Shown piece after piece: positions 324 through 57,170 of a stretch of DNA of 64,000 bases. The stretch comes from Octopus sinensis (taxonomy: Eukaryota). Position 1 is the stretch's first letter; every line of letters starts with the position of its first letter. The notes beneath the pieces are model-generated. The model saw nothing but the letters and a program-made list of their open reading frames with translations, was not told the DNA's origin and ran no database searches. Where the stretch lies: contig NC_043015.1 in the NCBI RefSeq assembly GCF_006345805.1, positions 16,244,001 to 16,308,000 of the forward strand. The letters are read 5' to 3'. Made by a program: the position numbers and the translations under genes.

Positions 324-522
324 TACTCTTTACTCTTTTACTTGTTTCAGTCATTTGACTGCGGCCATGCTGGAGCACCGCCTTTAGTCGAGCAAATCGA
401 CCCCGGGACTTATTCTTTGTAAGCCCAGTACTTATTCTATCGGTCTCTTTTGCCGAACAGCTAAGTGACGGGGATGTAAACACACCAGCATCAGTCAAGC
501 AATGCTAGGGAGCCAAACACAG

Positions 523-553
<31 letters not shown>

Positions 554-728
554 CATACATATATACGACAGGCTTCTTTCAGTTTCCGTCTACCAAATCC
601 ACTCACAAGGCATTGGTCAGCCCGGGGCTATAGCAGAAGACACTTGCGCAAGATGCCACGCAGTGGGACTGAACCCGGAACCATGTGGTTGGTAAGCAAG
701 CTACTTACCACACAGCCACTCCTGCGCC
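324..728 (-). mobile_element. tRNA-derived SINE family A
   Basis: Head ggcgcaggagtggctgtgtggt...gggttcagtccc, internal (TA/TG)n tract, 3' tail gactgaaacaagtaaaagagtaaaagag; near-identical body at 25898-26258. Confidence 0.85.
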
Positions 729-10975: not shown

Positions 10976-11260
10976 TTCCCTAAATATTGAAGTGGGAAAA
11001 TTATCCGAAATTACGTGGGTAAAACATACTTGCGCCCATTTATTAAGATGATAGTTTTTTTAATGAAAATTTTATTCTTATTTTATCTTTTAATATTTGA
11101 TTTAAATATTTCAGAAACTGAAAAGCCTTAATGATACACGGTATTTTCGTCGGTGGCGAAAAGCTGGCTAACATGGGTAAGATTAGCTTTATATGTCAGA
11201 AGTCTAAGGTGACTTTCGTGGATAAAAATATTATCCAGTTTTATGAACAGTTTGTGAGTA

Positions 11261-11422
11261 ATGACTGGAGTCATTAAGAAAACATGGGATCCTTGGAAAA
11301 TGTACGATGTGTCTTTAAAAGAGAGAAAGGCTATGGAAGAACGTGCTTTGATGAGAGAAAAACTCAAAGGTGAATGGCAAAAGAAAGTTACCGACCCATA
11401 CAAAGGCACTGGAGGTTACATC
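11261..11422 (+). CDS. NDUFB4: NADH dehydrogenase 1 beta subcomplex subunit 4 (B15), coding exon 1
   Basis: ATG at 11261, 54 codons (MTGVIKKTWDPWKMYDVSLKERKAMEERALMREKLKGEWQKKVTDPYKGTGGYI), phase-0 donor gtaagt at 11423; resembles the B15 N-terminal ...LR.E..K...NPY.....GG..FD motif. Confidence 0.9.
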
Positions 11423-11620
11423 GTAAGTATTACAATAAACTTGCGATTATTTGTACTTACAGAAATTTACTATCGTTTATTGGTTAAATATAGGAAAATA
11501 TTTAGATTTATAGGTGTATGGAACCTCTGACTTGGTTCAAAGATTGTATTATTTTAGCGAAAAGATCGAGCTTCATCATGCCTTTCTTAAGGACATGAAT
11601 TTTCATACCTATGGAAGAAA

Positions 11621-13950: not shown

Positions 13951-16598
13951 AAGGAAACTTGAACAAGATGGGCAGCTATTTTGAAAAATGGTTCAAATGA
14001 AAATGAACAAAACTATTACATGAAGGACGCTGTTGTAAGAAAAAACTTTTTCTAGTGAAGGCTATAATTCTGTATTCCAAACTGCATTGTCTCTTGGGTT
14101 AAAGAAATTTAATGAAAACTGAATGTTTATAAATGTCTTGTTCTAGTTTGAGGCTATACATAATGATATATCCAGGCAGAGACTTTTAACTGATGTCATG
14201 AAGCAATTTTATTCAAAACAGCAAAACATACAAACACAAGGTTCAAGCATTGCAAAATGTATATCATTCAGGCTCAAAATATATTTTCTGTAGCATAGTT
14301 ATTTTTTTATTTTATCTAGTTTCAGCTCACGAGCTGTGGCCATGCTGGGGCAAAAAATTTTTTTTAGAGTATATTTTCAAAAGAAATATTCCAGCATTGG
14401 GTGGTCACCAATTATAATGGGGAAAGAAGTAAAACCACAAGATTTAGATAAGTTGAATAAGAAATGATTTATTCCTCTCATAAAAATAAGAATGCCAAAA
14501 GAGAATGATGGCTATATTACAGTCTGGAACAAGGATTTAAATGACTTCAGTTCTGCTGGGTCTGTTGATGGTCTGCTGTCTGTTGCGGTAATGATGAAAA
14601 CTGGAGAAGACTGGTTCATCGATGCCGGTCCAAAGAGATGTGGTATGCATGGTAAATGGCTGCTGCCAAAGACCCAGAGAGGCAGAATACAATGGTTTTT
14701 ATAACTCTGGGTAGGCTCCAGAGACAAAGTGGTCTTTCCCACATTGCAAACACATGATTGGACAGTTAGCAACTGGACAATACATGCCACTAGTGACTCA
14801 ATGGACAGAAAAGTGAGCCTATTTTGTGGTATTTAAGCTTAAACAACCAAGCTTAATAAAGGCATTACACCCTTCTGCTACATGCTGGTGAGTGTCTTTA
14901 TTCATTCAGGAAATCTAAAATTAAAAACAAAATTTGAGAAGTGGTGCTGTCAGTAATGTGATTCCACCTCAAAATACAAGGTTGGGTAATGAAAATGAGG
15001 AAAATTTAGAAACAAAGATGAAGTATAACTACAGATTGCTGCCTCACTGCACCCAACTTTTGTTTCCTCATACCTTTCTGAGAAATGCATTTTTTTAAAA
15101 TGAGATTTAAAATCGTAACCTGTTGAGTGGATGATTCAACTAGCAAGAAGGCTTACCTTTCATATTGATAATATTTAGATGTCGATTTCTTTGAGCAATA
15201 GTTCTTGAAAAGAACTTTACCACTGCTGGTGTATGTCTCTAAAAGCACGGAGATTCCTAAATATGGTGAGATATATTCTATCCAACTACTGCAATGATAA
15301 ATTACTGAATTGTTACTAAATGAATTAAGCCATAAAATTTGGAAATACTGGTCTTAATAAATCAGTTTTACTTGTGTTTTCTCATGCTCATATAGTTTGG
15401 ATGAATATATTTTGTATCATCTGTTCTATAAGATAGAATATTAGGTGTACCTTTATTGCTTATCTGTCACTTGTATACATTCACTTCAACTTTTTCATTT
15501 TGCTTTTCATTAATGAAGATTATGCTTATATATTTTTTAGCAGTTGAGAGTTTGTCTTCATGCAGTTCTCATGTATCTATAAGTTTTTCTATGTGGTGGC
15601 CCATAAATATGTTCTGCCACTAGACTTCTTTATTTAGTTTATAACTTCCAGTTTGTAGCTAATAGTATAGCTTGATCTTTGTCCTGTATTCTTGAAGATA
15701 AGAGAGAACAACAGAAGGAGCAACAATATCTGAACTGAATTAAACACAAGCAGTCAACAATAATAGTTGTGTTTGAACTTTTTGTTATTTCTATTAGTTA
15801 ATTTGGGGAAAGTAGATGTGCCCATCACTTTTGCAAGCCATTTATGACTGGTGGTATTGATGCTGTTACCATAAACTGGTACAAGTTGACTGCAGGAAAG
15901 ATATATAAGGAGGGAGACCCAGAGGCTTGATGATCTGGAATGGAAAGATTGAGCATGGTGGTTAGTGCAGGGTTTAAGGTGTAGGCACAACATGAGCAGT
16001 GGTGGCATAATACTGTTCAGTTCCTAGGAGTAGATGCCATTGTAGTTGCAGCAAAAAAACTTTTACCATTCAGTCAAGTTGCCTTTCTCTGGATGCTACA
16101 TGGGATGTCTATGTACTAGCAGCACAGTTACAAATACTGGATCTCACTTAAGCTTTGTAGCTTAGCTGAGACCTATGATGTTGAGTATTTTCTGACTCTG
16201 AACAAAAACGTTTTTTGGATGCAGTCTTTGCTACGTTAAGGATGTGCATTCACCTTTAATAATAGTGAACTGTAGCATTTGGAGCAATCATGAGGACTCT
16301 AGCTACATACTGTTCATAAGTAATGAAGTAAGGTGCAATGGTGTTTTCTTATGGGGAATGTTAATTATAATAATTTTAAAAAATTGAATAGATAGGTAAG
16401 CAATCTAGTAATTTGCTGATGTAAAATCCTGTTGAATTTTGAGGCTTGAAAGAATTATACATTTTAGGTTGGTGGTGAATAAACTGACTACTAAACACTT
16501 GTTTTTATTATGCTCATGTAAGTAATTAGCATTTGAAAAATAATTAAATATTGCAGCTATGAAAAATTTACAATCTTTTCTCATTTTATTTTTAACAG

Positions 16599-16742
16599 TT
16601 TGATCCTCAAATGCAGCGCTTTTATTCAATGCGTGTAACCGGATTTAATTACTTTAAAGTATCATTCAAGTCTGTGATGGTCGGCTTAAATTTTGTGGTT
16701 GTTCCAATTGCAGTCTTTACTTATTTAATATATAAGGAAAGA
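16599..16742 (+). CDS. NDUFB4: NDUFB4 coding exon 2 (contains the transmembrane helix)
   Basis: Polypyrimidine tract plus aacag acceptor; 48 codons FDPQMQRFYSMRVTGFNYFKVSFKSVMVGLNFVVVPIAVFTYLIYKER; donor gtaagt at 16743. Confidence 0.92.
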
Positions 16743-16910
16743 GTAAGTATTTCCTATAAAAAAATTTTGCTAAATGGATTTATAATCTCCAATGAATTCC
16801 TTTTAAAATCATTTATAATATAATCAACTTCAGTTTCTTGTATTGCTTAGGCTACACAAATCATGTATATTATTTGTACTTCAATTCTTTTCTTTTTTTA
16901 TTCTTTTTAG

Positions 16911-20580: not shown

Positions 20581-21207
20581 ATTAAGTAATAAATGTTAAA
20601 CAATATTATAGCGATGCTAATATGAGACTAACCTCTTTTGTAGGTGTGGACACTGAAAAGCCACACACCAGATATAGGACATGACACACTGGTACTTCTA
20701 TTATTATTTGTTCATTCTCATCTGCACTGTGAAAGATCTTTGTATATTTTTGTTAGTTGTAATTATTCATACCAGTATGTAATACCTGATGACAAAAGGA
20801 TCACAAGGAACAATACACTGTCATGGAAGAGATCTGTTCAGTCCATGCCATCATGGAAAAAACATGTCAAAGTGATGATACAGATATCATCATTTAATGT
20901 CCCTTTTCCAAGCTGGCATGGGTTGGACAGGATCTGGTGAGCCGCAGGGCTATGCTGAACTCCAGTGTCAGCCTTGGTATGTTTTCTATGGCTGGATGAT
21001 GCTCCTAATGCCAATCACCTTACAGTGTACTGGGTCTTGTTTCATGCCAATGACACTAGTGAAGTCACAAAGTTGCAAGACAGAAAAAAAAAAAGCCCTC
21101 ACAACCATGTGGGGGCTTTATGCCAGGTACTGAAAAGCTAATGTATAAAGAGGGACGAGCACAAATGTCTTGCTATAAAAGGAATACATAGCTATCCTTC
21201 ATTATAC

Positions 21208-21636
21208 AAGAGGATGCTGACAATACAAATAATACAACTCGTGAAACAGAAAGAGGTTCTGAAGATTATTTCCAGGATACGTAAGTCCTTTATTTTAATA
21301 CTGTTACATCTCCTGTAGGAGGCACAATGGCCCAGTGGTTAGGGCAGCGGACTCGCGGTCGTAGGATTGCAGTTTCGATTCCCAGACCGGTGGTGATCCC
21401 TGCTGTACTCTTTCACCACAACTTTCTCTCACTCTTACTTCCTGTTTCTGTTGTACCTGTATTTCAAAGGGCCGGCCTTGTCACTCTCTGTGTCACGCTG
21501 AATATCCCCGAGAACTACGTTAAGGGTACACATGTCTGTGGAGTGCTCAGCCACTTACACGTTAATTTCACAAGAAGGCTGTTCCGTTGGTCAGATCAAC
21601 CGGAACCCTCGTTGTCGTAACCGACGGAGTGCTTCA
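21208..21636 (+). pseudogene. Inverted duplicate of an SA exon 3' end (73 bp), its donor and intron start, and the intronic SINE
   Basis: 21208-21280 equals revcomp 37306-37234 with 1 mismatch, followed by gtaagt, the intron start and the SINE of 36816-37196 with a 61-bp internal deletion. Confidence 0.93.
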
Positions 21637-23419
21637 AGATTGTTTGAAAGGTATTGGTGTTTTTACGGCGAGAAGACAGTTATTTCCCTAAAGTTGAAGT
21701 TCAATTGCATAGCATTTACATTTAAAATATGTACACCTTGCCTTTTTGTGTTGACATTAATCTCGACAACCTTTAATGTCTTTACTTGCTCATGAAATGT
21801 TCCTTCTTTCATTTATCTCGATTGTTTGTTATCTGATTCACTTGGTTTCATAGTATGAATGTAAAGCAATCATTTTATTTAATCTGTCAGCTAAAAACTA
21901 TTGAAACTGATCTTATACTATAGTTGTTTGTGTCAGTGCACTCATCAGGTATCATTGATCTATGGGACGGTTGGACAAGTTGTTTTGAGAAAATTTGGTT
22001 TAAATGTTTGACAACTCTGCACCGTCCATTGGATGGGGGGCGTTTTGCTTGTACACATAATTTCCTAGATATACTTTCAGATAGTCTCTACAAGTGATGA
22101 TCAGATTTATCACATGGTTCTTCATTTTAGCATAAGCTGCAGCATTGTAGAAAAATAATGAACTCACTGCTGCTTGGTTCAGGAGTGCACCTTTAGTGCT
22201 CTGTTGCAGGTACTTAAACCATTAGTTTTCTCTTGCCCACATTTTACTTATAAAGACCAAGAGTATGAAAGTGATGGCTTTGACTAGGATGGATTCTGAT
22301 GTCAGGAGGATAACACATCTTTTCTCTGAGAGCAGCCCGGTATCTTACTTGTGATAGGACTTTAACTCTAAAAATCCTGTACTGCAGATAACAGCAACTA
22401 TCACCAAATTCTGAACCACAGTTCAAATAGTGATATTCTTGAGAGAGAGAGAGAGAGAGAGAAAACAGGAAGCACTCCATCTGTATGAGAAACAAAGTTT
22501 AGCCTGATTTTAGAAAGAACTCTGTTTGCACTAGCCACATTTATTGTCTTATTCATTGAATTCCAATTTCTTCCTTCAATTTTTAAGCATCAGTGGTGTT
22601 AGAATTGATATTTATTAATGATTTTATTGGAGAATTTGTACATGTAAAAAAAATAATCAGTGCTATTTCAATGTCATATAGTTTCAGCATTTCTATACTG
22701 AACTGGATTTCATAGAAACCTCTAGTTTCTAATAGGATTGGGGAATGTATATGCAGGCAGCATTACAGGAGTTAAAAAACACATGGAAGATTATAGACTG
22801 TTCTTAAAAAGGATTTGTTGCTAGCTAATGTAGAAGCAGGTACTGCCATTTTTTCCTGCTCATATTAGTCTAATAAGCAATAGTTATTCATGCATTGGTA
22901 TTCCAGTGATCACAATTTAGTGTTTTGTGAATTAGGTATCTTGGATCTACTCTGTAGCTGTTTTGCTGAAGGATTCCATCACTATGAAACAGTTACATTA
23001 CATGTGTGCGTGTATATAAAGGGTGGGGTGGGGTGGGGGAGACACTGGGCTAAATTGGTAATTTCTGATTTCTCATTATTTTCTCCTGACCTGTTTGAAA
23101 CCATTACAATGCAAGTATTGCATCATCATTGGGAGTGAAAATCGGTTAACATAGTTGTTGCTGCTGAAGTTAGAGTTTGAAACAGTCAGGTAACAGGTAC
23201 TTCTTTTCAAGAAATTTTTTCTCAACTTCGACTGGATTGTTACTGGGATTGCTAATAAAATATCTAGATAATTTTTGGTGTTTAATTATTGATATTCTTT
23301 TTTCTGTTAGATTCCAAGTTAATTTTTCACACGCTAGTGCCTAACCTGATAATCTTTAAAAGATGAAGACTAAACTGGGGGGGAAAATGAGTAACGACTA
23401 ATTTCAATAATTCATTCTC

Positions 23420-25897: not shown

Positions 25898-26014
25898 GGT
25901 GCAGGAGTGGCTGTGTGGCATCTTGGGCAAGTGTCTTCTACTATAGCCTCGGGCCAACCAATGCCTTGTGAGTGGATTTGGTAGACAGAAACTGAAAGAA
26001 GCCTGTTGTATATA

Positions 26015-26056
<42 letters not shown>

Positions 26057-26258
26057 TGTGTGTCTGTGTTTGTCCCTCTAGCATTGCTTGACAACCGATG
26101 CTGGTGTGTTTACATCCCCGTCACTTAGCGGTTTGGCAAAAGAGACCGATAGAATAAGTACTGGGCTTACATAGAATAAGTCCCGGGGTCGATTTGCTCG
26201 ACTAAAGGTGGTGCTCCAGCATGGCCGCAGTCAAATGACTGAAAAGAGTAAAGAGTAT
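25898..26258 (+). mobile_element. SINE family A copy with a deletion in the head
   Basis: Same body and tail as 324-728; the B-box part of the head is missing. Confidence 0.85.
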
Positions 26259-32537: not shown

Positions 32538-32751
32538 CTTAGATGCAGGTGAGAAGATTGAGAATTAAGAAAAGAGATTGGGAGATATGGAAGAAGTAGA
32601 GAATGTAAAAAAAAAACGGAGAAAAATTTTTAGAGAATGAGAATGTGGAAACAGGGAAGAGAGACTGAGAGAAAGGGAGAGACTTAATGAAAAGAAAATG
32701 GTTCTTTTTAAACTTAGATACTCATGAACCTCTTTAACATTCAACACTTAC

Positions 32752-32902
32752 TGATGGATCTTCAATAGGAGGTCCATCTTCTTCAAAAAGTCCTCCTTGC
32801 ATGACAGGATGATGGGCTCGACCTCTGGCTGACACAACATCAGAATTGTCAAATTCATTCATGTGGCTTTCTCCTTCTTCAGACACATTTTCAAGACTTG
32901 AC
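32752..32902 (-). CDS. STAG1/2: Cohesin subunit SA C-terminal exon
   Basis: tgtag acceptor, 151 nt, SSLENVSEEGESHMNEFDNSDVVSARGRAHHPVMQGGLFEEDGPPIEDPS, donor gtaagt; GLFEEDGPPIED resembles STAG GLMEEDAEPIFED. Confidence 0.8.
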
Positions 32903-33299
32903 CTACATCCGTAAAATCAAATAAATATCAAGTTATTTTTATTTCAAAAGAAACCTAAAGTCTAAGAACCAATGCTTAATTAACAGAAAAGAAATGTTTG
33001 CTGATAGATCTTTTCTAAGTGGATGCCATCAGATTAAGCCTCTAGACAAGATATATTCTATTAATGAAATATAATATGACTAACTTGGCTAATTGGTTAT
33101 TTTTCATGTTAAAAATATTGAAATAGGTAAAAAGAGTTATGTAAACAAATGGCTCAGTCACTTTCACTTTGAAGATATTCTTAATTTGTTATGACTAAAT
33201 TGGACTCAGTCGTCTAAATACACTTTTCTATATGTGTATGTATTGCATTATGATTGGAGAAACAGATATACCAAAAGATTGTAGCTAACCTCTATGATA

Positions 33300-36715: not shown

Positions 36716-36815
36716 CTACAAATTAATTCTGGGTTATAAAAGGAATTCAAAAGACAAAGAGAAATGGATGAGGCATAATAATACAGACAGCAGTTTATAG
36801 GGTACAGGAGATGTA

Positions 36816-37196
36816 TGGAAGCACTCCGTTGGTTATGACGACGAGGGTTCCGGTTGATCCGATCAACGGAACAGCCTGCTCATGAAATTAACGTGTAAGT
36901 GGCTGAGCACTCCACAGACACGTGTACCCTTAACGTAGTTCTCGGGGATATTTAGCGTGACACAGAGAGTGACAAGGCCGGCCCTTTGAAATACAGGTAC
37001 AACAGAAACAGGAAGTAAGAGTGAGAGAAAGTTGTGGTGAAAGAGTACAGCAGGGATCACCACCATCCCTGCCGGAGCCTCATGGAGCTTTAGGTGTTTT
37101 CGCTCAATAAACACTTACAACGCCCGGTCTGGGAATCGAAACCGCGATCCTACGACCGCGAGTCCGCTGCCCTAACCACTGGGCCATTGCGCCTCC
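36816..37196 (-). mobile_element. Young tRNA-derived SINE (family C here) with 13-bp TSD
   Basis: tRNA-like head ggaggcgcaatggcccagtggttaggg...ggtttcgattccc; TSD tacaggagatgta at 36803-36815 and 37197-37209; CpGs largely intact. Confidence 0.9.
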
Positions 37197-37233
37197 TACA
37201 GGAGATGTAACAGTATTAAAATAAAGGACTTAC

Positions 37234-37471
37234 GTATCCTGGAAATCATCTTCAGAACCTCTTTCTGTTTCACGAGTTGTATTATTTGTATTGTCAGCAT
37301 CCTCTTCAAGTTTCCTCCGTTTCGGAGTAGGTGGCACAGGTAAATGAGGTGTAGATAAAGTAGTGGATGCCTGTGCTGCTGCTATGACAGCTGAGGCAGC
37401 AGCAGCTGCAGCAGCACGGTTGCTTGCCTCTTTTGCTAACGCAGCTGCATCCATGGTCTCATCTCCAGATG
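37234..37471 (-). CDS. STAG1/2: Cohesin subunit SA C-terminal low-complexity exon
   Basis: ttgtag acceptor, 238 nt (phase 1 in, phase 2 out, fitting both neighbours), SGDETMDAAALAKEASNRAAAAAAAS...PKRRKLEED...SEDDFQD, donor gtaagt. Confidence 0.82.
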
Positions 37472-39009: not shown

Positions 39010-40246
39010 CAAGGATCAGCTGGAAAGTTCATAGGCTGACCAAGATACTTTCATGGAATGTGACCAAATGAAATTTGTTTTTTAACGTAGTCCCCATTGT
39101 GGCCCTTAAACTTCTTCCATCAGTGTTGCAGTATTAAGACTCCTTTGGTGAAGCTTTTATCCTGTTGGTCAAAAAAGTCATCAGCAGCAGATATGACATC
39201 ATCACCACTGTGAAACTAGTTCAAATCAAGAGAAGAGGGTGGCTGATAAACCAGTTCAGAGCCACAGTCATGCACAGCAGCCATTAAAACCAAGAACTTG
39301 TGTGTTAGAACATTGTCCTAATCAAACAAGACACCCTTTTGTCAGTTTTCCTGGGTGTTTGATCTTGATAGCCTTTTGTAACTGCCTCAGCAACCTGGCA
39401 TGGTACTCTCCACTGATGGTGTGGCCCTTTTGAAGATAGTCAACAAACACAATGCATTTTGCATTCCTAAAATCCGAGGACATCACCTTCCCTGCAGATA
39501 AAAACACCTTGGCCTTCTTTGGAGCAGGTGAGGAGGGATGTTTCCACTGCATTGATTGTCTCTTTGTCTCTGGCTCAAATTCATTAAGCCATTACACATT
39601 CTGAGTTAGAAAACATTCAAGGAAACCAGCTAGATCTGTTTGGAACAATGTTGGATTTTCCTGAGATGTGATACACCAAGTGAGCTTTTGATCAGGTGTC
39701 AAAAGACATAGCACTCACTGAGCGAAATCCTTCATCATGCTAAGTTCATTGTGCAGAATATTCTCAAACCTCTTGTAGGATATGCTGATAGCATGGACTA
39801 TTTGAGTTATACTCAATTGCCTGTCATCCATCAGCATGTGGTGAACACAATCAATGATTTCCTCAGTGGTGGCAGTAACAGGACGTCCAGAGCTTGGATC
39901 ATCTTCAAGACTCTCCCATCTCCTCCTAAATTCAGTGACCCACTTTTACACTATTGATAAAGCTGGAGCATCACCTTCTGATGTAGCAACCATGTCAGCA
40001 TGAATATCATGGGGGGAGGGGGGACAAAACCTTTTTTTTTCTGCAGGTACTTGATAATACCACAGTACCAAATTTTATCCATTTTCAAGAAGTTGTTACT
40101 AGTTGATGTCTCCTTTGAACAGACAGATGTCAGTTTACCAAAAAAGAAACAATGCAGTTATATAAAACAAAAAGAGCTGCAAGATTTCACAGCTCAAACA
40201 TCATTACTTCATAGTCAGCCTATTAACTTTTTTTAGCCCACCCTTG
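39010..40246 (-). mobile_element. mariner transposon (irritans/Hsmar2-like), defective
   Basis: TA flanks, imperfect TIRs caagg...aaagtt.ataggctgac; QWKHPSSPAPKKAKVFLSAGKVM...VDYLQKGHTISGEY; stops and an internal deletion. Confidence 0.9.
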
Positions 40247-54249: not shown

Positions 54250-57170
54250 TGTGTGTCGACACTGTATTCATCTGTTTCCAAATAGTACACGTGCAAAGTG
54301 GGGAGAAATTGTCTCCAACAATTTAACGTTCTCTACAAGTGGATATTCCTATTTCTGAGATGTTGATGATGCAGCATTGTGCTTCCGATATTCTGGAGGA
54401 ATTCAGGTAGAATGTTTCCCACTGTCAATGATCTTGAAAATTTAAATATTCACTCATGAGGGGATGTGTTGGTAGCTGTACAGAGGAGTCCTCTCATGGC
54501 TGATGGAAAGGACGACTAACCACTGTCCTTTATCTAGTTGTAGTGAGCTAAGTGCTAGATTTATGGTCTTCATAAGGGTACCCTTGACCCTTTCACATTG
54601 GCCATTACCTTGAGGTCAAGAGGGAGATATTCTAGTTTTTATTGTCCTATTAGCATGAAGGAAGTCTTGGAGCTTCTTATTATCAAATTGGGTTCCTCTG
54701 TCAGTGGATACAACTTGGTGATCCAAGCAACGAAAAGAGATTGAGCAGGTGGGGAATTACTCTTTCAGTATTCATGTCATTGCATGGGTATGTGAATGGA
54801 TACCTTGGTATTGTGTGGTTGATGGCAGGGGGTCGACAAAGTCAGCGGAGAGGCGCTCCCAAGGTCTTGATGCCTGTATTAACTGATACATTAGAGGAAG
54901 TGAGGTTTGAGTTTAATATATGTAGAACAACTGAGTGCCATTTCGAAGATTTCATTGAGGGAGAACGGCAGGTTTCATACTTTACGGTAGTGAAGGTGGC
55001 ACAGTTGTTTGTGAAGGGTTATTAGTGCTGTTGTGTCTCTTATTGCTGCACATTTTGGCAGTGCATCAGCTGCTTTGTTTTGAGTTCCTATAGGAGATTG
55101 TGTAATTTATGTCTGAGAGGTCCAAACGCCAGCGTATGAATCTTTCATTTTTTATGTCCCTTGTTTATTGAAGATCATCGCCACCGAGTGTTGATCGGTG
55201 ACGATGTTGCAGTATGGGGAAATATGTATTAGGTGGCACCATTTGCAACAACATTCTACGATTGTGCAGGCTTCTGTCTCAACAATGGATTGGTGTTTTT
55301 CTGTTTTTGAAAGGGATCTTGAATAGAAGGCCACTGGCCTTCCCTGTTGTGATAGCATCCCTCCCAAGGCTAGGTCAGAAGCATCTGTTTCGATGGTAAG
55401 TGGTATTCCAGGTTGTAGAACAGCAAGTATGGCATTTACCAATGCAGTCTTTAGGGATGTGATTGCTGTTTTTGTTTCTTCTGACAGTCCTGCTTTGTTG
55501 CTATTCCTTCTGGCTCTTGTAAGTGGAATGGTGAGTCTGGAGCACTTAGGTATCCACTTTGCATAATATGCAAAAATGCCTTTTATTCGATTTGGTTCTC
55601 TCAATGTTCTGGCATATCTAGCAGAACTCAAAACCTTTTAGGGCCAGGTTTTATTGTTAAATTTCCAATATGTCCAAGGAAGCTGATTTGCTTGTTGAGA
55701 GAATTGGCTCTTGCTCTTATTGATGGTCATGCCAGATGTTTCAGCTGCCTGGATAAATCTCCTGAGGTTATTGTCATATTCATGATCTTTGCCAGCTATG
55801 ATGATGTCATGTAGATAGGCAAAAGTTTTTGAAGATTGTTTCTTTTTATGAATTCATCCATGACATGCTGGAAAATTGCTGTGGCATTGGTACAACCAAA
55901 TGGGAGGCATTTAAACTTGTACAGTCTCCCCACTGCTTCAAATGCTGTCAGTTTATAGTGTTTGGGTAGACGTTCCACCAGATGATATGCAGCTGTCATA
56001 TCTATGTTGCTGAAAATCTTGTTTGCCACTACTTCATTTAGAAGATCATTGATCCAGTGGGTAGGGTAGGCATCTAGTTGTGTGTAGATATTTATAGTGT
56101 TCGCGTAGTCGATCACCAGTTTTTCCTTCCTTCCATTAGATGTCACGAAGCAGTGAGCTCACCAGGGACTAAAGCTTTCTTGAATTATGTCCCCTGAAAA
56201 TAACCTATTTCATGCTTAATAAACTCTGTGCCTCTAGGACTGCATCTTGAAGTTGGTGTAATTGGTTTTAGCTTAGAGGTCTTAATGCCAGGAAGTAGCT
56301 TGTATGCGATGCATTTTAGGTTTGACATGGACATGCAGAATGACACAGGCTTGAGTATACCCTTGAAGTCAATTGTAACTGCAGAGTGTTGACTGAGGAT
56401 ATCGATTTTGATGATGACCAGTGCTACAAGATGGTCAGCCACAAGGAAATTAGTGTTATATGTGTAATTTCCCAGTTGTAGTTTGCTACTGAATTTGCCT
56501 TTAATTTCCAGTGCTGTGTTGTTGGCCAAGTTAACTTTTTCTGGGCAGGCATGATTGTATTGTAATCCTCAGACTGCAAGAAATTTTGCTTCTATAAATG
56601 TCCTGTCAGAACCCATGTCAAGAAGGGCTTGTGTATTGTTGTCCTTAATTTTAATGGGAACCAGCCGTCCTGTACCATTTGTTACTGTTAAAATGGTGGA
56701 TGATAAGGTTCCATCACTGTTTTCCTCTCAGGCTCTGTGATTGCTGCAGTTTCAGGGAAGTTTTGTTTGTTTCTTGGTAGCTTTTTGAGAGAAGCAGACT
56801 TCCTTCCAATGGCCTTTCTTCTGACACCTTTTGCAAGTAGAGTTTCTCACCGGGCATTGATTTTTTTTTATTTATATGGCTGTCTCTACTACACCAAAAA
56901 CATGCTGATTTAGTGGCTGCAAGATGGAGTGGTTGATCAATACTAACTGAGCCTTGCGTTAGGTTGCAAGTGTCTTCAATGGCCACCTCCATGGTCTGAG
57001 CAAGCTTATAGAGTGTTTCTAAGCTGTCATCTGATGACTCGAGAAGTCTTTGTCTGATTGATGGTGATTAAAGCTCAGCCACAAAAGCATCACCAATTAG
57101 AATTTTTCAGTTAAGGTCTGCTGTTAGGGCTTGGATTTTACACTTCTGGGCCAGCACCTGAAGGCTTGAT
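54250..57170 (-). mobile_element. Ty3/Gypsy internal region (gag C-term, protease, RT, RNase H, integrase), frameshifted, no LTRs seen
   Basis: gag SPSIRQRLLE; CFWC knuckle; RT KERLVIDY-type KEKLVIDYANTIN...LPFGCTNA...YLHD; RNase H IETDASDLALGGMLSQQGRPVAFYSRSL...VTDQHS. Confidence 0.92.

What the first reader, a model, noticed from the sequence alone, without database searches (positions are those of the whole stretch)
21208..21636. SA exon end, splice donor and intronic SINE copied 15.6 kb away in inverted orientation: candidate SINE-primed 5' transduction of host pre-mRNA
Seen: 21208-21280 is the last 73 bp of the SA exon 37234-37471 (1 mismatch). It is followed by the intact donor gtaagt, 37 bp of intron including the SINE's upstream TSD (tacatctcctgta), and the SINE of 36816-37196 with a 61-bp deletion at a GG microhomology. 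The copy stops at the SINE 3' end (gagtgcttc) and lacks the downstream TSD. CAAGA occurs at both junctions (21207-21211, 21635-21639). About a dozen substitutions, with CpG losses on both copies, argue against an assembly duplicate. Known: SINE 3' ends recruit partner LINE RT, and 5' transduction is described for elements transcribed from upstream promoters such as SVA. Inferred: an unspliced SA Pol II transcript was reverse transcribed from the SINE tail past the SINE head into the exon. Intronic SINEs could thus move exon ends with working donors. The copy now offers a + strand donor ~4 kb downstream of NDUFB4 and could pair with its source in long SA read-through RNA.
Basis: partly seen in the sequence, partly recalled or inferred. 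Interest (0 to 1): 0.8.

Follow-up and report, generated by a model that had tools for sequence, protein, structure and literature searches.

The report
Local inverted copy of exon-end plus SINE
A 428-base piece of a cohesin (SA/STAG) gene, made of the end of an exon, its splice donor, a little intron and a whole intronic SINE, has been copied upside-down 15.6 kb away and stops at the SINE's tail; this fits reverse transcription of unspliced gene RNA started at the SINE tail, but DNA repair copied from the neighbouring SINE explains it almost as well.

Summary
Window 21208-21635 (+) copies 36818-37306 (-): 73 nt of exon, an intact gtaagt donor, 37 nt of intron that includes the source SINE's upstream target-site duplication (TSD), and then the SINE with a 61-nt gap. 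It ends within 0-2 nt of the family's consensus 3' terminus, GAGTGCTTCC(A).

The SINE belongs to a young family of thousands of copies with 9-13 nt TSDs. All 13-14 differences are private to one copy or the other, so the source SINE was still consensus-like when it was copied.

New context: the patch sits exactly between the 5'-truncated end of an old minus-strand element B and the 5'-truncated end of a young plus-strand retroelement, Rep-C. The word (C)AAG recurs at three successive junctions, which looks like repeated endonuclease/TPRT (target-primed reverse transcription) use of one site.

Reverse transcription of unspliced SA pre-mRNA from the SINE tail is plausible (about 0.4). It does not explain why the copy landed 15.6 kb from its source, which has a chance of about 1e-5 under random integration.

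The main rival (about 0.33) is an ordinary independent SINE insertion there, later repaired by one-sided homologous copying from the nearby SINE that ran into its flank and closed at the AAGA microhomology.

No empty site or second case could be found with these tools. Exon-plus-intron 5' transduction is already known for human SVA.

The parts
21208..21280 (+). Copy of the last 73 nt of the SA exon. One mismatch (T, where the source has G). AAGA at 21208-21211 is shared with the target flank.
21281..21317 (+). Copied intron start: intact gtaagt donor (21281-86), a TTTT run, and the source SINE's upstream TSD tacatctcctgta (21305-17).
21318..21635 (+). SINE-A copy with a tRNA-like head carrying A- and B-box-like motifs. 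It lacks 61 nt between 21388 and 21390 (GG overlap) and ends GAGTGCTTC, 0-2 nt short of the family terminus. It carries 9-10 private changes, 7 of them at CpG.
21636..21639 (+). AAGA between the SINE tail and Rep-C. It is a candidate short TSD, filler, or the start of a longer lost TSD (AAGATTGTTTG...).
37234..37471 (-). Source exon, a probable C-terminal exon of the SA/STAG gene. It is an open frame with ag/gt boundaries.
   Evidence: No protein match.
36816..37196 (-). Source SINE-A (381 nt), in sense orientation in the SA intron 37 nt after the donor. It is flanked by 13-nt TSDs at 37197-37209 and 36803-36815, and it contains the 61 nt (about 37064-37124) that the copy lacks.
20886..21207 (-). 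Element B, an old repeat (65-85% identical to other copies). Its (GAT)n-type tail is at 20886 and it is 5'-truncated at about 21207; other copies run on for at least 150 nt. It forms the left flank of the patch.
21639..22059 (+). Rep-C, a young retroelement (about 1.2 kb full length, with a (TA)n-type tail and variable 5' ends). Here it is 5'-truncated exactly where the patch ends. An AT-rich tail may run on to about 22091.
20870..20885 (+). Left copy of the direct repeat AAGTGATGAT(A)CAGAT. The right copy is at 22092-22106. It is the probable TSD of element B and brackets B + patch + Rep-C.
   Evidence: shared 10-mer reached by 14 of 2000 shuffles, and the match extends to 15 of 16 nt with one indel
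22092..22106 (+). Right copy of the same direct repeat. Together with 21207-10 and 21635-38 it gives three successive (C)AAG junction words.

Best explanation
A reverse transcriptase from the SINE's partner LINE bound the tail of the intronic SINE-A inside an unspliced SA Pol II transcript. It began target-primed reverse transcription at a nick in front of AAGA, at the 5' junction of the resident Rep-C element. It copied the whole SINE and, finding no RNA 5' end at the SINE head, ran on through 37 nt of intron, the donor and 73 nt of exon. The cDNA end was then joined to the upstream DNA end at the AAGA microhomology, which trimmed the usual 9-13 nt TSD to 4-5 nt.

Shown: the boundaries, the family terminus, the orientation, the flanks and the ages.

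Inferred: that the template was RNA; that the nick site was re-used; and that the 61-nt loss was a template jump or a later deletion.

For the landing site to be 15.6 kb from the source, the template must have been nascent or freshly released pre-mRNA still near its gene. The site lies in the convergent intergenic region downstream of SA. This step is conjecture.
For: - The copy ends within 0-2 nt of the family terminus GAGTGCTTCC(A) and lacks the source's downstream TSD.
- The SINE is in sense orientation in the SA gene. The RNA model requires this; a DNA model is indifferent to it.
- The carried flank contains TTTT, so an RNA template cannot be a Pol III transcript (established knowledge of Pol III termination).
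- Family copies end at a fixed internal point, so this RT normally starts internally at the tail.
- The flank after the tail starts with A, as most family TSDs do.
- The site has taken three successive insertions at (C)AAG, as expected for a nick site that is kept at a 5' junction and cut again.
- The source SINE carried no mutation when it was copied, and the copy is as diverged as the older family members (2.85% from consensus). The event therefore dates to the family's active period.
- Rep-C is of similar age.
- Precedent: SVA 5' transductions made by read-through from exons into an intron and ending at the intronic SVA's 3' end (PMC12593883).
Against: - Locality: under random integration the chance of landing within 16 kb of the source in 2.72 Gb is about 1e-5. 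No precedent for local retroposition of nascent pre-mRNA is known to me.
- The 4-5 nt repeat is outside the family's 9-13 nt TSD range and is mostly explainable as templated sequence.
- None of the 25 sampled family copies with TSDs carries a 5' flank, and the flank exists only twice in the genome.
- The 61-nt stretch does not fold into a hairpin that would promote an RT skip (z = -0.58).
- Only one A-to-G change occurs in the copy lineage, so there is no RNA-editing signature.
Confidence: 0.4

Rival explanations
1. Two steps at the DNA level. First, an ordinary, independent SINE-A insertion landed at the Rep-C 5' junction with a normal TSD of about 11 nt (AAGATTGTTTG). Later a double-strand break near its head was repaired by one-sided invasion of the nearest homologous sequence, the SA-intron SINE-A 15.6 kb away. 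DNA synthesis ran off the SINE head into the donor's unique flank (TSD, intron, donor, 73 nt of exon). The end was closed by microhomology-mediated joining at AAGA, which removed the rest of the left TSD. Homology ends at the SINE tail simply because that is where the resident SINE ended.
For: - It explains both the locality and the exact stop at the SINE tail without any RNA.
- It restores a family-typical TSD length.
- The 4-nt microhomology at the 5' junction is typical of such joins.
- Young SINE-A copies do cluster locally in inverted pairs: 2 of 29 sampled 3-kb loci hold a second copy about 1 kb away (L018, L030).
- The L018 pair shares a private 1-nt insertion seen in none of the other 28 sampled copies, yet the 5' flank of L018a is not repeated anywhere near L018b. 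The 5' flank of L018b lies beyond the locus end and could not be read. This pattern is what gene conversion between neighbours would give.
- Coupled homologous/non-homologous repair that inserts donor-flanking sequence is established (my knowledge: Richardson and Jasin 2000). Synthesis-dependent MMEJ is covered in PMC2943611.
Against: - It needs two events plus a resident SINE. From the family density seen here, the chance of one lying within 16 kb is about 5-15%.
- The sense orientation of the source SINE in its gene becomes a 1-in-2 coincidence.
- The 61-nt loss needs a further event.
- Mutation density shows no sign that the 3' part of the copy's SINE is older than, or of a different subfamily from, the 5' part.
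Confidence: 0.33
2. Replicative template switching (MMBIR/FoSTeS) with no resident SINE. A 3' end at ...TATACAAGA switched to the SA locus at AAGA, copied 183 nt, switched again at GG (skipping 61 nt), copied 247 nt, and returned to the original template at C|AAGA, duplicating AAGA.
For: - The event is local, inverted and a few hundred bases long.
- All three junctions (5' junction, internal gap, 3' junction) have 4-, 2- and 1-nt microhomologies.
- It explains the 61-nt gap within the same event.
- The phenomenon is reviewed in PMC8421209.
Against: - Ending within 2 nt of the SINE terminus would be chance, about 1%.
- Falling exactly at the junction of two truncated retroelements would be a second chance event, about 1-2%.
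Confidence: 0.1
3. A single chimeric retrocopy. Reverse transcription began on Rep-C RNA at its (TA)n tail and, after 420 nt, jumped to the SINE-A tail in SA pre-mRNA, as in U6-L1 chimeras.
For: - Rep-C is 5'-truncated exactly at the patch, in the same orientation and of similar age, about 3% from its relatives.
- TACAAG flanks the patch plus Rep-C (21205-10 and 22089-94).
Against: - There is no microhomology at the switch point.
- The spacer AAG(A) repeats the target word, which fits two insertions better.
- The jump would need an RNA 3' end at the SINE tail, or else a coincidence.
- The tails differ (TCCA-type versus TA-type), which suggests different partner LINEs.
Confidence: 0.08
4. Either an assembly artefact, or an inversion with staggered breaks that leaves inverted duplicates at its ends.
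For: Only the inverted arrangement itself.
Against: - The two copies differ at 13-14 sites plus a 61-nt indel and have different flanks.
- The source is continuous with original sequence on both sides: the exon upstream and an intact 13-nt TSD downstream. Neither copy therefore has the one-new-junction pattern of a staggered-break inversion.
Confidence: 0.03

Closest known systems
5' transduction by SVA (and L1) in humans, including exon plus retained-intron read-through into an intronic SVA
   Same: An upstream host promoter drives a transcript that contains a sense-oriented intronic non-autonomous element. The new copy carries host exon and intron sequence 5' of the element and ends at the element's 3' end (PMC12593883; Damert 2009 and Hancks 2009 as cited there).
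   Different: SVA transcripts end at the SVA's own poly(A) signal and are primed on poly(A) by L1. Here there is no poly(A): priming would be internal, at a LINE-type tail of a tRNA-derived SINE inside a longer RNA. SVA offspring are dispersed, whereas this copy is 15.6 kb from its source. The TSD is only 4-5 nt.
Stringent LINE/SINE pairs that share a 3' tail (eel UnaL2/UnaSINE1 type)
   Same: The RT recognises the 3' tail and starts at short tail repeats even when the RNA extends further 3'. This is my knowledge of Kajikawa and Okada 2002. Family copies here end at a fixed GCTTCC(A)+short-repeat terminus.
   Different: The partner LINE was not identified here. Run-through past the SINE head into host RNA is not a described feature of those systems.
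Coupled homologous/non-homologous double-strand-break repair (one-sided invasion, synthesis into donor flank, end joining) and SD-MMEJ
   Same: Copying begins within a repeat-sized homology, captures unique donor flank, closes with microhomology, and prefers a nearby template.
   Different: There is no direct evidence that a SINE was resident at the site before the event.
MMBIR/FoSTeS templated insertions
   Same: A local, inverted insertion of hundreds of bases with microhomology at every junction (PMC8421209).
   Different: The end coincides with a retroelement terminus, and the site is a re-used retroelement insertion point.
L1-mediated chimeric retrocopies (U6-L1 type)
   Same: The layout is a 5' piece that ends at an RNA-defined 3' end, fused to a 5'-truncated retroelement in the same orientation.
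   Different: The 5' piece is not a complete small RNA. A spacer repeats the target word.

Membership tests
tRNA-derived SINE family (SINE-A), for the repeat inside the patch | Many dispersed copies with fixed 5' and 3' ends, flanked by TSDs | tested here: met
   More than 4000 first-look candidates. The 40 scored copies are 96-98% identical over source positions 37196-36816. TSDs are 9-13 nt in 25 of 29 copies.
tRNA-derived SINE family (SINE-A), for the repeat inside the patch | tRNA-like head with Pol III A and B boxes | tested here: inconclusive
   The head contains TGGCCCAGTGG and GGTTTCGATTCC, which resemble the A- and B-box consensus by eye. ARAGORN and Rfam call nothing.
LINE-mediated retrocopy with 5' transduction | The copy ends at the element's own 3' terminus and lacks the source's 3' flank | tested here: met
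   It ends GCTTC|AAGA against the family terminus GCTTCC(A). The source's downstream TSD is absent.
LINE-mediated retrocopy with 5' transduction | Family-typical TSD flanking the whole insert | tested here: not met
   Only AAGA/CAAGA (4-5 nt) is present, and most of it is also templated by the source. The family range is 9-13 nt, though 4 of 29 family copies also lack a normal TSD.
LINE-mediated retrocopy with 5' transduction | The source element lies in sense orientation within a transcription unit that supplies the flank | tested here: met
   The SINE head faces the exon on the minus strand. STAG-domain exons lie upstream on the same strand.
LINE-mediated retrocopy with 5' transduction | An empty pre-insertion site exists in a relative or allele | not testable with these tools
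   The flanks are unique in the assembly and there is no alternative haplotig. No cephalopod genomes are in reach.
LINE-mediated retrocopy with 5' transduction | Other family members carry transduced 5' flanks (generality) | tested here: inconclusive
   None among the 25 sampled copies with TSDs. One copy (L021) has a 475-nt 5' extension inside its TSD, but it consists of tandem head fragments, not host flank. A genome-wide scan was not possible.
One-sided homologous repair from a paralogous repeat | A recipient repeat was present before the event | not testable with these tools
   This needs an orthologous or polymorphic intermediate. Mutation patterns give no signal either way.
One-sided homologous repair from a paralogous repeat | A nearby homologous donor, and a microhomology join on the non-homologous side | tested here: met
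   The donor is 15.6 kb away on the same contig. AAGA(G) is shared by the target and the exon at the 5' junction.
MMBIR/FoSTeS templated insertion | Microhomology at all junctions, with a local template | tested here: met
   AAGA, GG and C at the three junctions. The coincidences with the SINE terminus and with the element junction are left unexplained.

The most novel reading that the evidence does not exclude
The tail of an intronic SINE lets a LINE reverse transcriptase seize nascent, unspliced host pre-mRNA at its gene. The RT then writes the SINE, together with the upstream intron, splice donor and exon end, back into nearby DNA in the gene's own downstream region. This would be a local, transcription-coupled way for SINEs to scatter exon ends with working donors in cephalopod genomes, and it would also account for the local inverted SINE pairs seen in this family.
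Probability: 0.25. Interest if true: 0.7.

Novelty: new variant of a known kind. Interest (0 to 1): 0.45.

Why it matters
If the RNA route is right, tRNA-derived SINEs with LINE-type tails, and not only poly(A)-dependent SVA and L1, can move host exon ends and splice donors. Retroposition of nascent transcripts would then be spatially tied to the source gene, which bears on exon shuffling and on the SINE-rich octopus genome.

If the DNA route is right, this is an ordinary example of repeat-guided ectopic repair that captured flanking sequence. It would be useful mainly as a caution: a copy that stops at a SINE tail is not proof of reverse transcription.

Either way, the copy places an intact gtaagt donor, preceded by an AG with a pyrimidine-rich run, 4.4 kb downstream of NDUFB4. 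It also creates a 430-nt inverted repeat with the SA intron.

Tried and rejected
- **Assembly duplicate:** rejected because of 13-14 private differences, a 61-nt indel and different flanks.
- **Staggered-break inversion:** rejected because the source keeps original sequence on both sides.
- **Pol III transcript starting upstream:** rejected because the carried flank contains a TTTT run.
- **RT skipping a hairpin as the cause of the 61-nt loss:** the fold is not better than shuffles.
- **The copy's SINE as a member of a subfamily lacking the 61 nt:**
  - An older related family without that module exists (contiguous hits at 82-94%).
  - The copy is much closer to the young family (2-3 mismatches per 111 nt), and no copies share its private variants (best hits 96-97% = consensus).
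  - So this idea is rejected.
- **A/A variants at 36836 and 36830 as subfamily markers** that would show independent origin: they are unlinked, recurrent CpG decays.
- **Element B as a 3'-truncated element needing a target deletion:** replaced by reading B as a minus-strand, 5'-truncated element with its own TSD.
- **Protein identification of the exon:** no hits.
- **STAG-domain paralog on C9310 as a way to map the last SA exons** (the whole domain lies in one open frame): it shares no DNA similarity with the window.
- **Empty-site haplotig:** none; the right flank is unique.
- **A second case at L018:** the 5' flank is not shared.

Full report
**1. What is there**

The window is contig C19:16,244,001-16,308,000 of a 2.72 Gb assembly in 13,516 contigs. 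Its repeats and genes look cephalopod.

Reading both regions, aligning them and scanning for repeats confirms the observation. Window 21208-21390 is the reverse complement of 37124-37306 (183 nt, 98%). Window 21389-21635 is the reverse complement of 36818-37064 (247 nt, 96%). About 61 nt of the source lie between these arms and are absent from the copy, with a 2-nt GG overlap at the gap.

In sense orientation the copy reads as follows:
- the last 73 nt of the open frame 37234-37471;
- gtaagt (21281-86);
- 31 further intron bases, including tacatctcctgta (21305-17);
- the repeat (21318-21635).

The flank part (exon plus intron) occurs exactly twice in the whole assembly.

**2. The repeat is a young, abundant SINE, and the copy stops at its true end**

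A search of the window's own genome gave more than 4000 first-look candidates. All 40 scored were 96-98% identical to the source over 37196-36816.

In 29 fetched copies the 5' end is GGAGGCGCAATGG. The 3' end is GAGTGCTTCC(A), often followed by one or two TCCA-like repeats or a few A's. TSDs are 9-13 nt in 25 of 29 copies and usually begin with A. The source has a perfect 13-nt TSD (37197-37209 and 36803-36815).

The copy reads GAGTGCTTC|AAGATTG. It therefore ends 0-2 nt short of the family terminus and lacks the source's downstream TSD.

All 29 relatives contain the 61 nt, so the copy has lost it. An older related family without that module exists (contiguous hits at 82-94%). The copy is far closer to the young family, and no genomic copies share its private variants (best hits 96-97%).

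**3. Age and direction**

Each difference was polarised against the 29 relatives:
- copy lineage: 9-10 changes (7 CpG transitions, one C>A, one A>G, and the tail base);
- source lineage: 4 changes (3 at CpG), plus 2 in the stretch the copy lacks;
- shared derived changes: none.

The source SINE was therefore still consensus-like when it was copied. The copy is 2.85% from consensus, as diverged as or more diverged than any sampled family member (0.3-2.1%). The event belongs to the period when the family was active.

The two A variants of the source at 36836 and 36830 are unlinked, recurrent CpG decays, not subfamily markers. They cannot show independent origin.

**4.

- *Left flank, 20886-21207.* This is an old repeat, element B, 65-85% identical to other copies. 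Other copies continue at least 150 nt beyond the point equivalent to 21207, and that continuation is nowhere nearby. The left end of B is an (ATC)n run. B is therefore best read as a minus-strand retroelement with a (GAT)n tail, 5'-truncated at about 21207.
- *Right flank, 21639 to about 22059.* This is Rep-C, a young plus-strand element. It is 95-98% identical to some copies over 170 nt. It has a fixed 3' end with a (TA)n tail and variable 5' ends, and it is about 1.2 kb at full length. In every longer copy the sequence continues upstream of the 21639 point, so Rep-C is 5'-truncated exactly where the patch ends.
- *Direct repeat.* AAGTGATGAT(A)CAGAT lies at 20870-85 and 22092-22106 and brackets B + patch + Rep-C (the 10-mer alone is reached in 14 of 2000 shuffles). 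I read it as B's TSD. That places both Rep-C and the patch precisely between B's 5' end and B's right TSD.
- *Junction words.* The junctions read TATAC-AAGA-GG (21203-13), GCTTC-AAGA-TTG (21631-42) and TCTAC-AAG-TGA (22087-97). The same word thus marks three successive junctions, as expected if one endonuclease nick site, retained at each 5' junction, was cut again.
- *Uniqueness.* The flank 22055-22420 is unique in the assembly, and no alternative haplotig gives an empty site.

**5. Genes**

- Pfam confirms NDUFB4 exons at 11258-11527 and 16596-16820 (+).
- STAG-domain exons lie at C19:16,378,816-16,380,540 on the minus strand, 97-99 kb upstream of the exon in question. A large SA gene running into the window is therefore credible.
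- The 78-residue exon found no relatives in two large protein searches or in Pfam. Its exon status is inferred from the open frame, the ag/gt boundaries and its position.
- An acidic open frame at 32737-32916 (-) may be the last coding exon. This is my reading and is not verified.
- If it is the last exon, the copy lies about 11 kb beyond the SA stop codon, in the convergent region between SA and NDUFB4.

**6. How it arose**

Any explanation must account for five facts:
- (a) the stop at the SINE tail;
- (b) the source flank attached 5' of the SINE head;
- (c) a 5' junction with AAGA(G) microhomology;
- (d) a position exactly at a re-used retroelement junction;
- (e) a distance of only 15.6 kb from the source, on the same contig and inverted.

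The family's RT must normally start internally at the tail, because copies end at a fixed point. The SINE is in sense orientation in the gene. The flank has a TTTT run, so only a Pol II transcript could carry it. The 5' join at microhomology with a shortened TSD is what 5'-truncated LINE-type insertions show. Human SVA provides a direct precedent for exon-plus-intron read-through copies that end at the intronic element's 3' end (PMC12593883).

Fact (e) is the problem. Random integration would place the copy within 16 kb of its source about once in 1e5 events. Even hundreds of run-through events genome-wide would not make one such pair likely. The RNA route survives only if the template was nascent or just-released pre-mRNA still at its gene, which is reasonable for an unspliced RNA but has no precedent known to me.

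*The main rival* has two steps. An ordinary SINE-A inserted at this hot junction with a normal TSD (AAGATTGTTTG). A later break near its head was repaired by one-sided invasion of the nearest homologous SINE. Synthesis ran into that SINE's flank, and closure at AAGA removed the rest of the left TSD.
- This explains (a), (c), (d) and (e) with documented repair behaviour, and it restores a normal TSD length.
- It needs two events and a resident SINE. Family density puts the chance of one within 16 kb at roughly 5-15%.
- It makes the sense orientation of the source a coincidence.

*Local inverted pairs are unusually common in this family.* Two of 29 sampled 3-kb loci hold a second young copy about 1 kb away in inverted orientation (L018, L030). 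One of these copies has an internal 120-nt deletion. The L018 pair shares a private 1-nt insertion seen in none of the other 28 copies, yet the 5' flank of L018a has no second copy near L018b. That pattern fits either local retroposition or gene conversion between neighbours, so it raises both hypotheses equally.

*Plain MMBIR/FoSTeS* accounts for all three microhomology junctions, including the 61-nt gap. It leaves both the SINE-tail stop and the element-junction position to chance, about 1% each.

*A template-switch chimera with Rep-C* fits the layout and the ages. It has no microhomology at the switch point, and the spacer repeats the target word.

*Artefact and inversion models* are excluded.

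My probabilities:

| Explanation | Probability |
|---|---|
| RNA run-through | about 0.40 |
| Resident SINE plus one-sided repair | about 0.33 |
| MMBIR | about 0.10 |
| Chimera with Rep-C | about 0.08 |
| Other, including artefact | the remaining 0.09 or so |

**7. Comparison with known systems, and novelty**

The closest known system is 5' transduction by SVA and L1. This case would differ in three ways: the element is a tRNA-derived SINE with a LINE-type tail; priming is internal and independent of poly(A); and the landing site is local. That makes it a new variant of a known kind if the RNA route holds, and an ordinary repair product if it does not.

**8. What would decide it**

- The state of the orthologous site in related octopuses or in population data: empty, plain SINE, or full patch.
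- A genome-wide comparison of SINE-A 5' flanks.
- A retrotransposition assay with the tail embedded in an intron.

None of these could be run here.

Noticed in passing
L021 (G000:C3:159706315-159707172): A full-length SINE-A is preceded by a 475-nt tandem array of about 43-nt SINE-head fragments. The array and the SINE are both enclosed by one 12-nt TSD (ATAGCAGACATC). This is a 5' extension made of repeated head pieces rather than host flank.
   Followed up: partly
L018 (G000:C5:134116531-134118419) and L030: These loci hold inverted pairs of young SINE-A copies about 1 kb apart. The L018 pair shares a private 1-nt T insertion found in none of the other 28 copies, but the 5' flank of L018a is not repeated near L018b. 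The second L030 copy has a 120-nt internal deletion. Among the roughly 115 top hits there are also three pairs spaced 0.2, 2 and 6 kb apart, so the family is locally clustered.
   Followed up: partly
hits, e.g. G000:C8:103806100-103806210: An older related SINE family (82-94% identity) joins the tRNA-like head directly to the body without the 61-nt segment. That segment therefore behaves as a module of the young family, and its absence from the copy falls close to that module boundary.
   Followed up: partly
window 21195-21286: The new 5' junction reads tccttcattatacaag|AGGATG. This is a pyrimidine-rich run followed by an AG directly in front of the copied exon end, which is followed by the intact gtaagt. 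The result is a potential cassette exon of about 70 nt on the + strand, 4.4 kb downstream of NDUFB4.
   Followed up: no
window 20868-20895 and 22090-22116: Both copies of the probable element-B TSD are locally palindromic (GATGAT...ATCATC on the left, GTGAT...ATCAC on the right). The similarity between them may extend a few bases into what I call B's tail.
   Followed up: no
window 337-663 and 25911-26252: This is another local inverted pair (96% and 87% over 159 and 150 nt), 25 kb apart. It belongs to a repeat that also flanks element-B copies elsewhere (L076 and L079 match both arms at 81-90%).
   Followed up: no
window 55155-57067 (-) and 39325-39945 (-): There are long open frames with the look of LTR-retrotransposon gag/pol (reverse transcriptase / RNase H-like) sequence, and fragments that look like a mariner-type transposase. 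Both lie inside what should be SA introns. They were not examined further.
   Followed up: no
G000:C9310:33219-33551 and G000:C9766:27684-28016: Two unplaced contigs carry a complete STAG domain in a single 152-residue open frame with the same Pfam score. They share no DNA similarity with the window. They may be a second, divergent STAG gene or a duplicated contig.
   Followed up: partly
window 32737-32916 (-): An acidic open frame (...EEGESHMNEFDNSD...EEDGPPIEDPS...) resembles the C-terminal tail of SA proteins and may be the last coding exon. It has no Pfam hit.
   Followed up: partly
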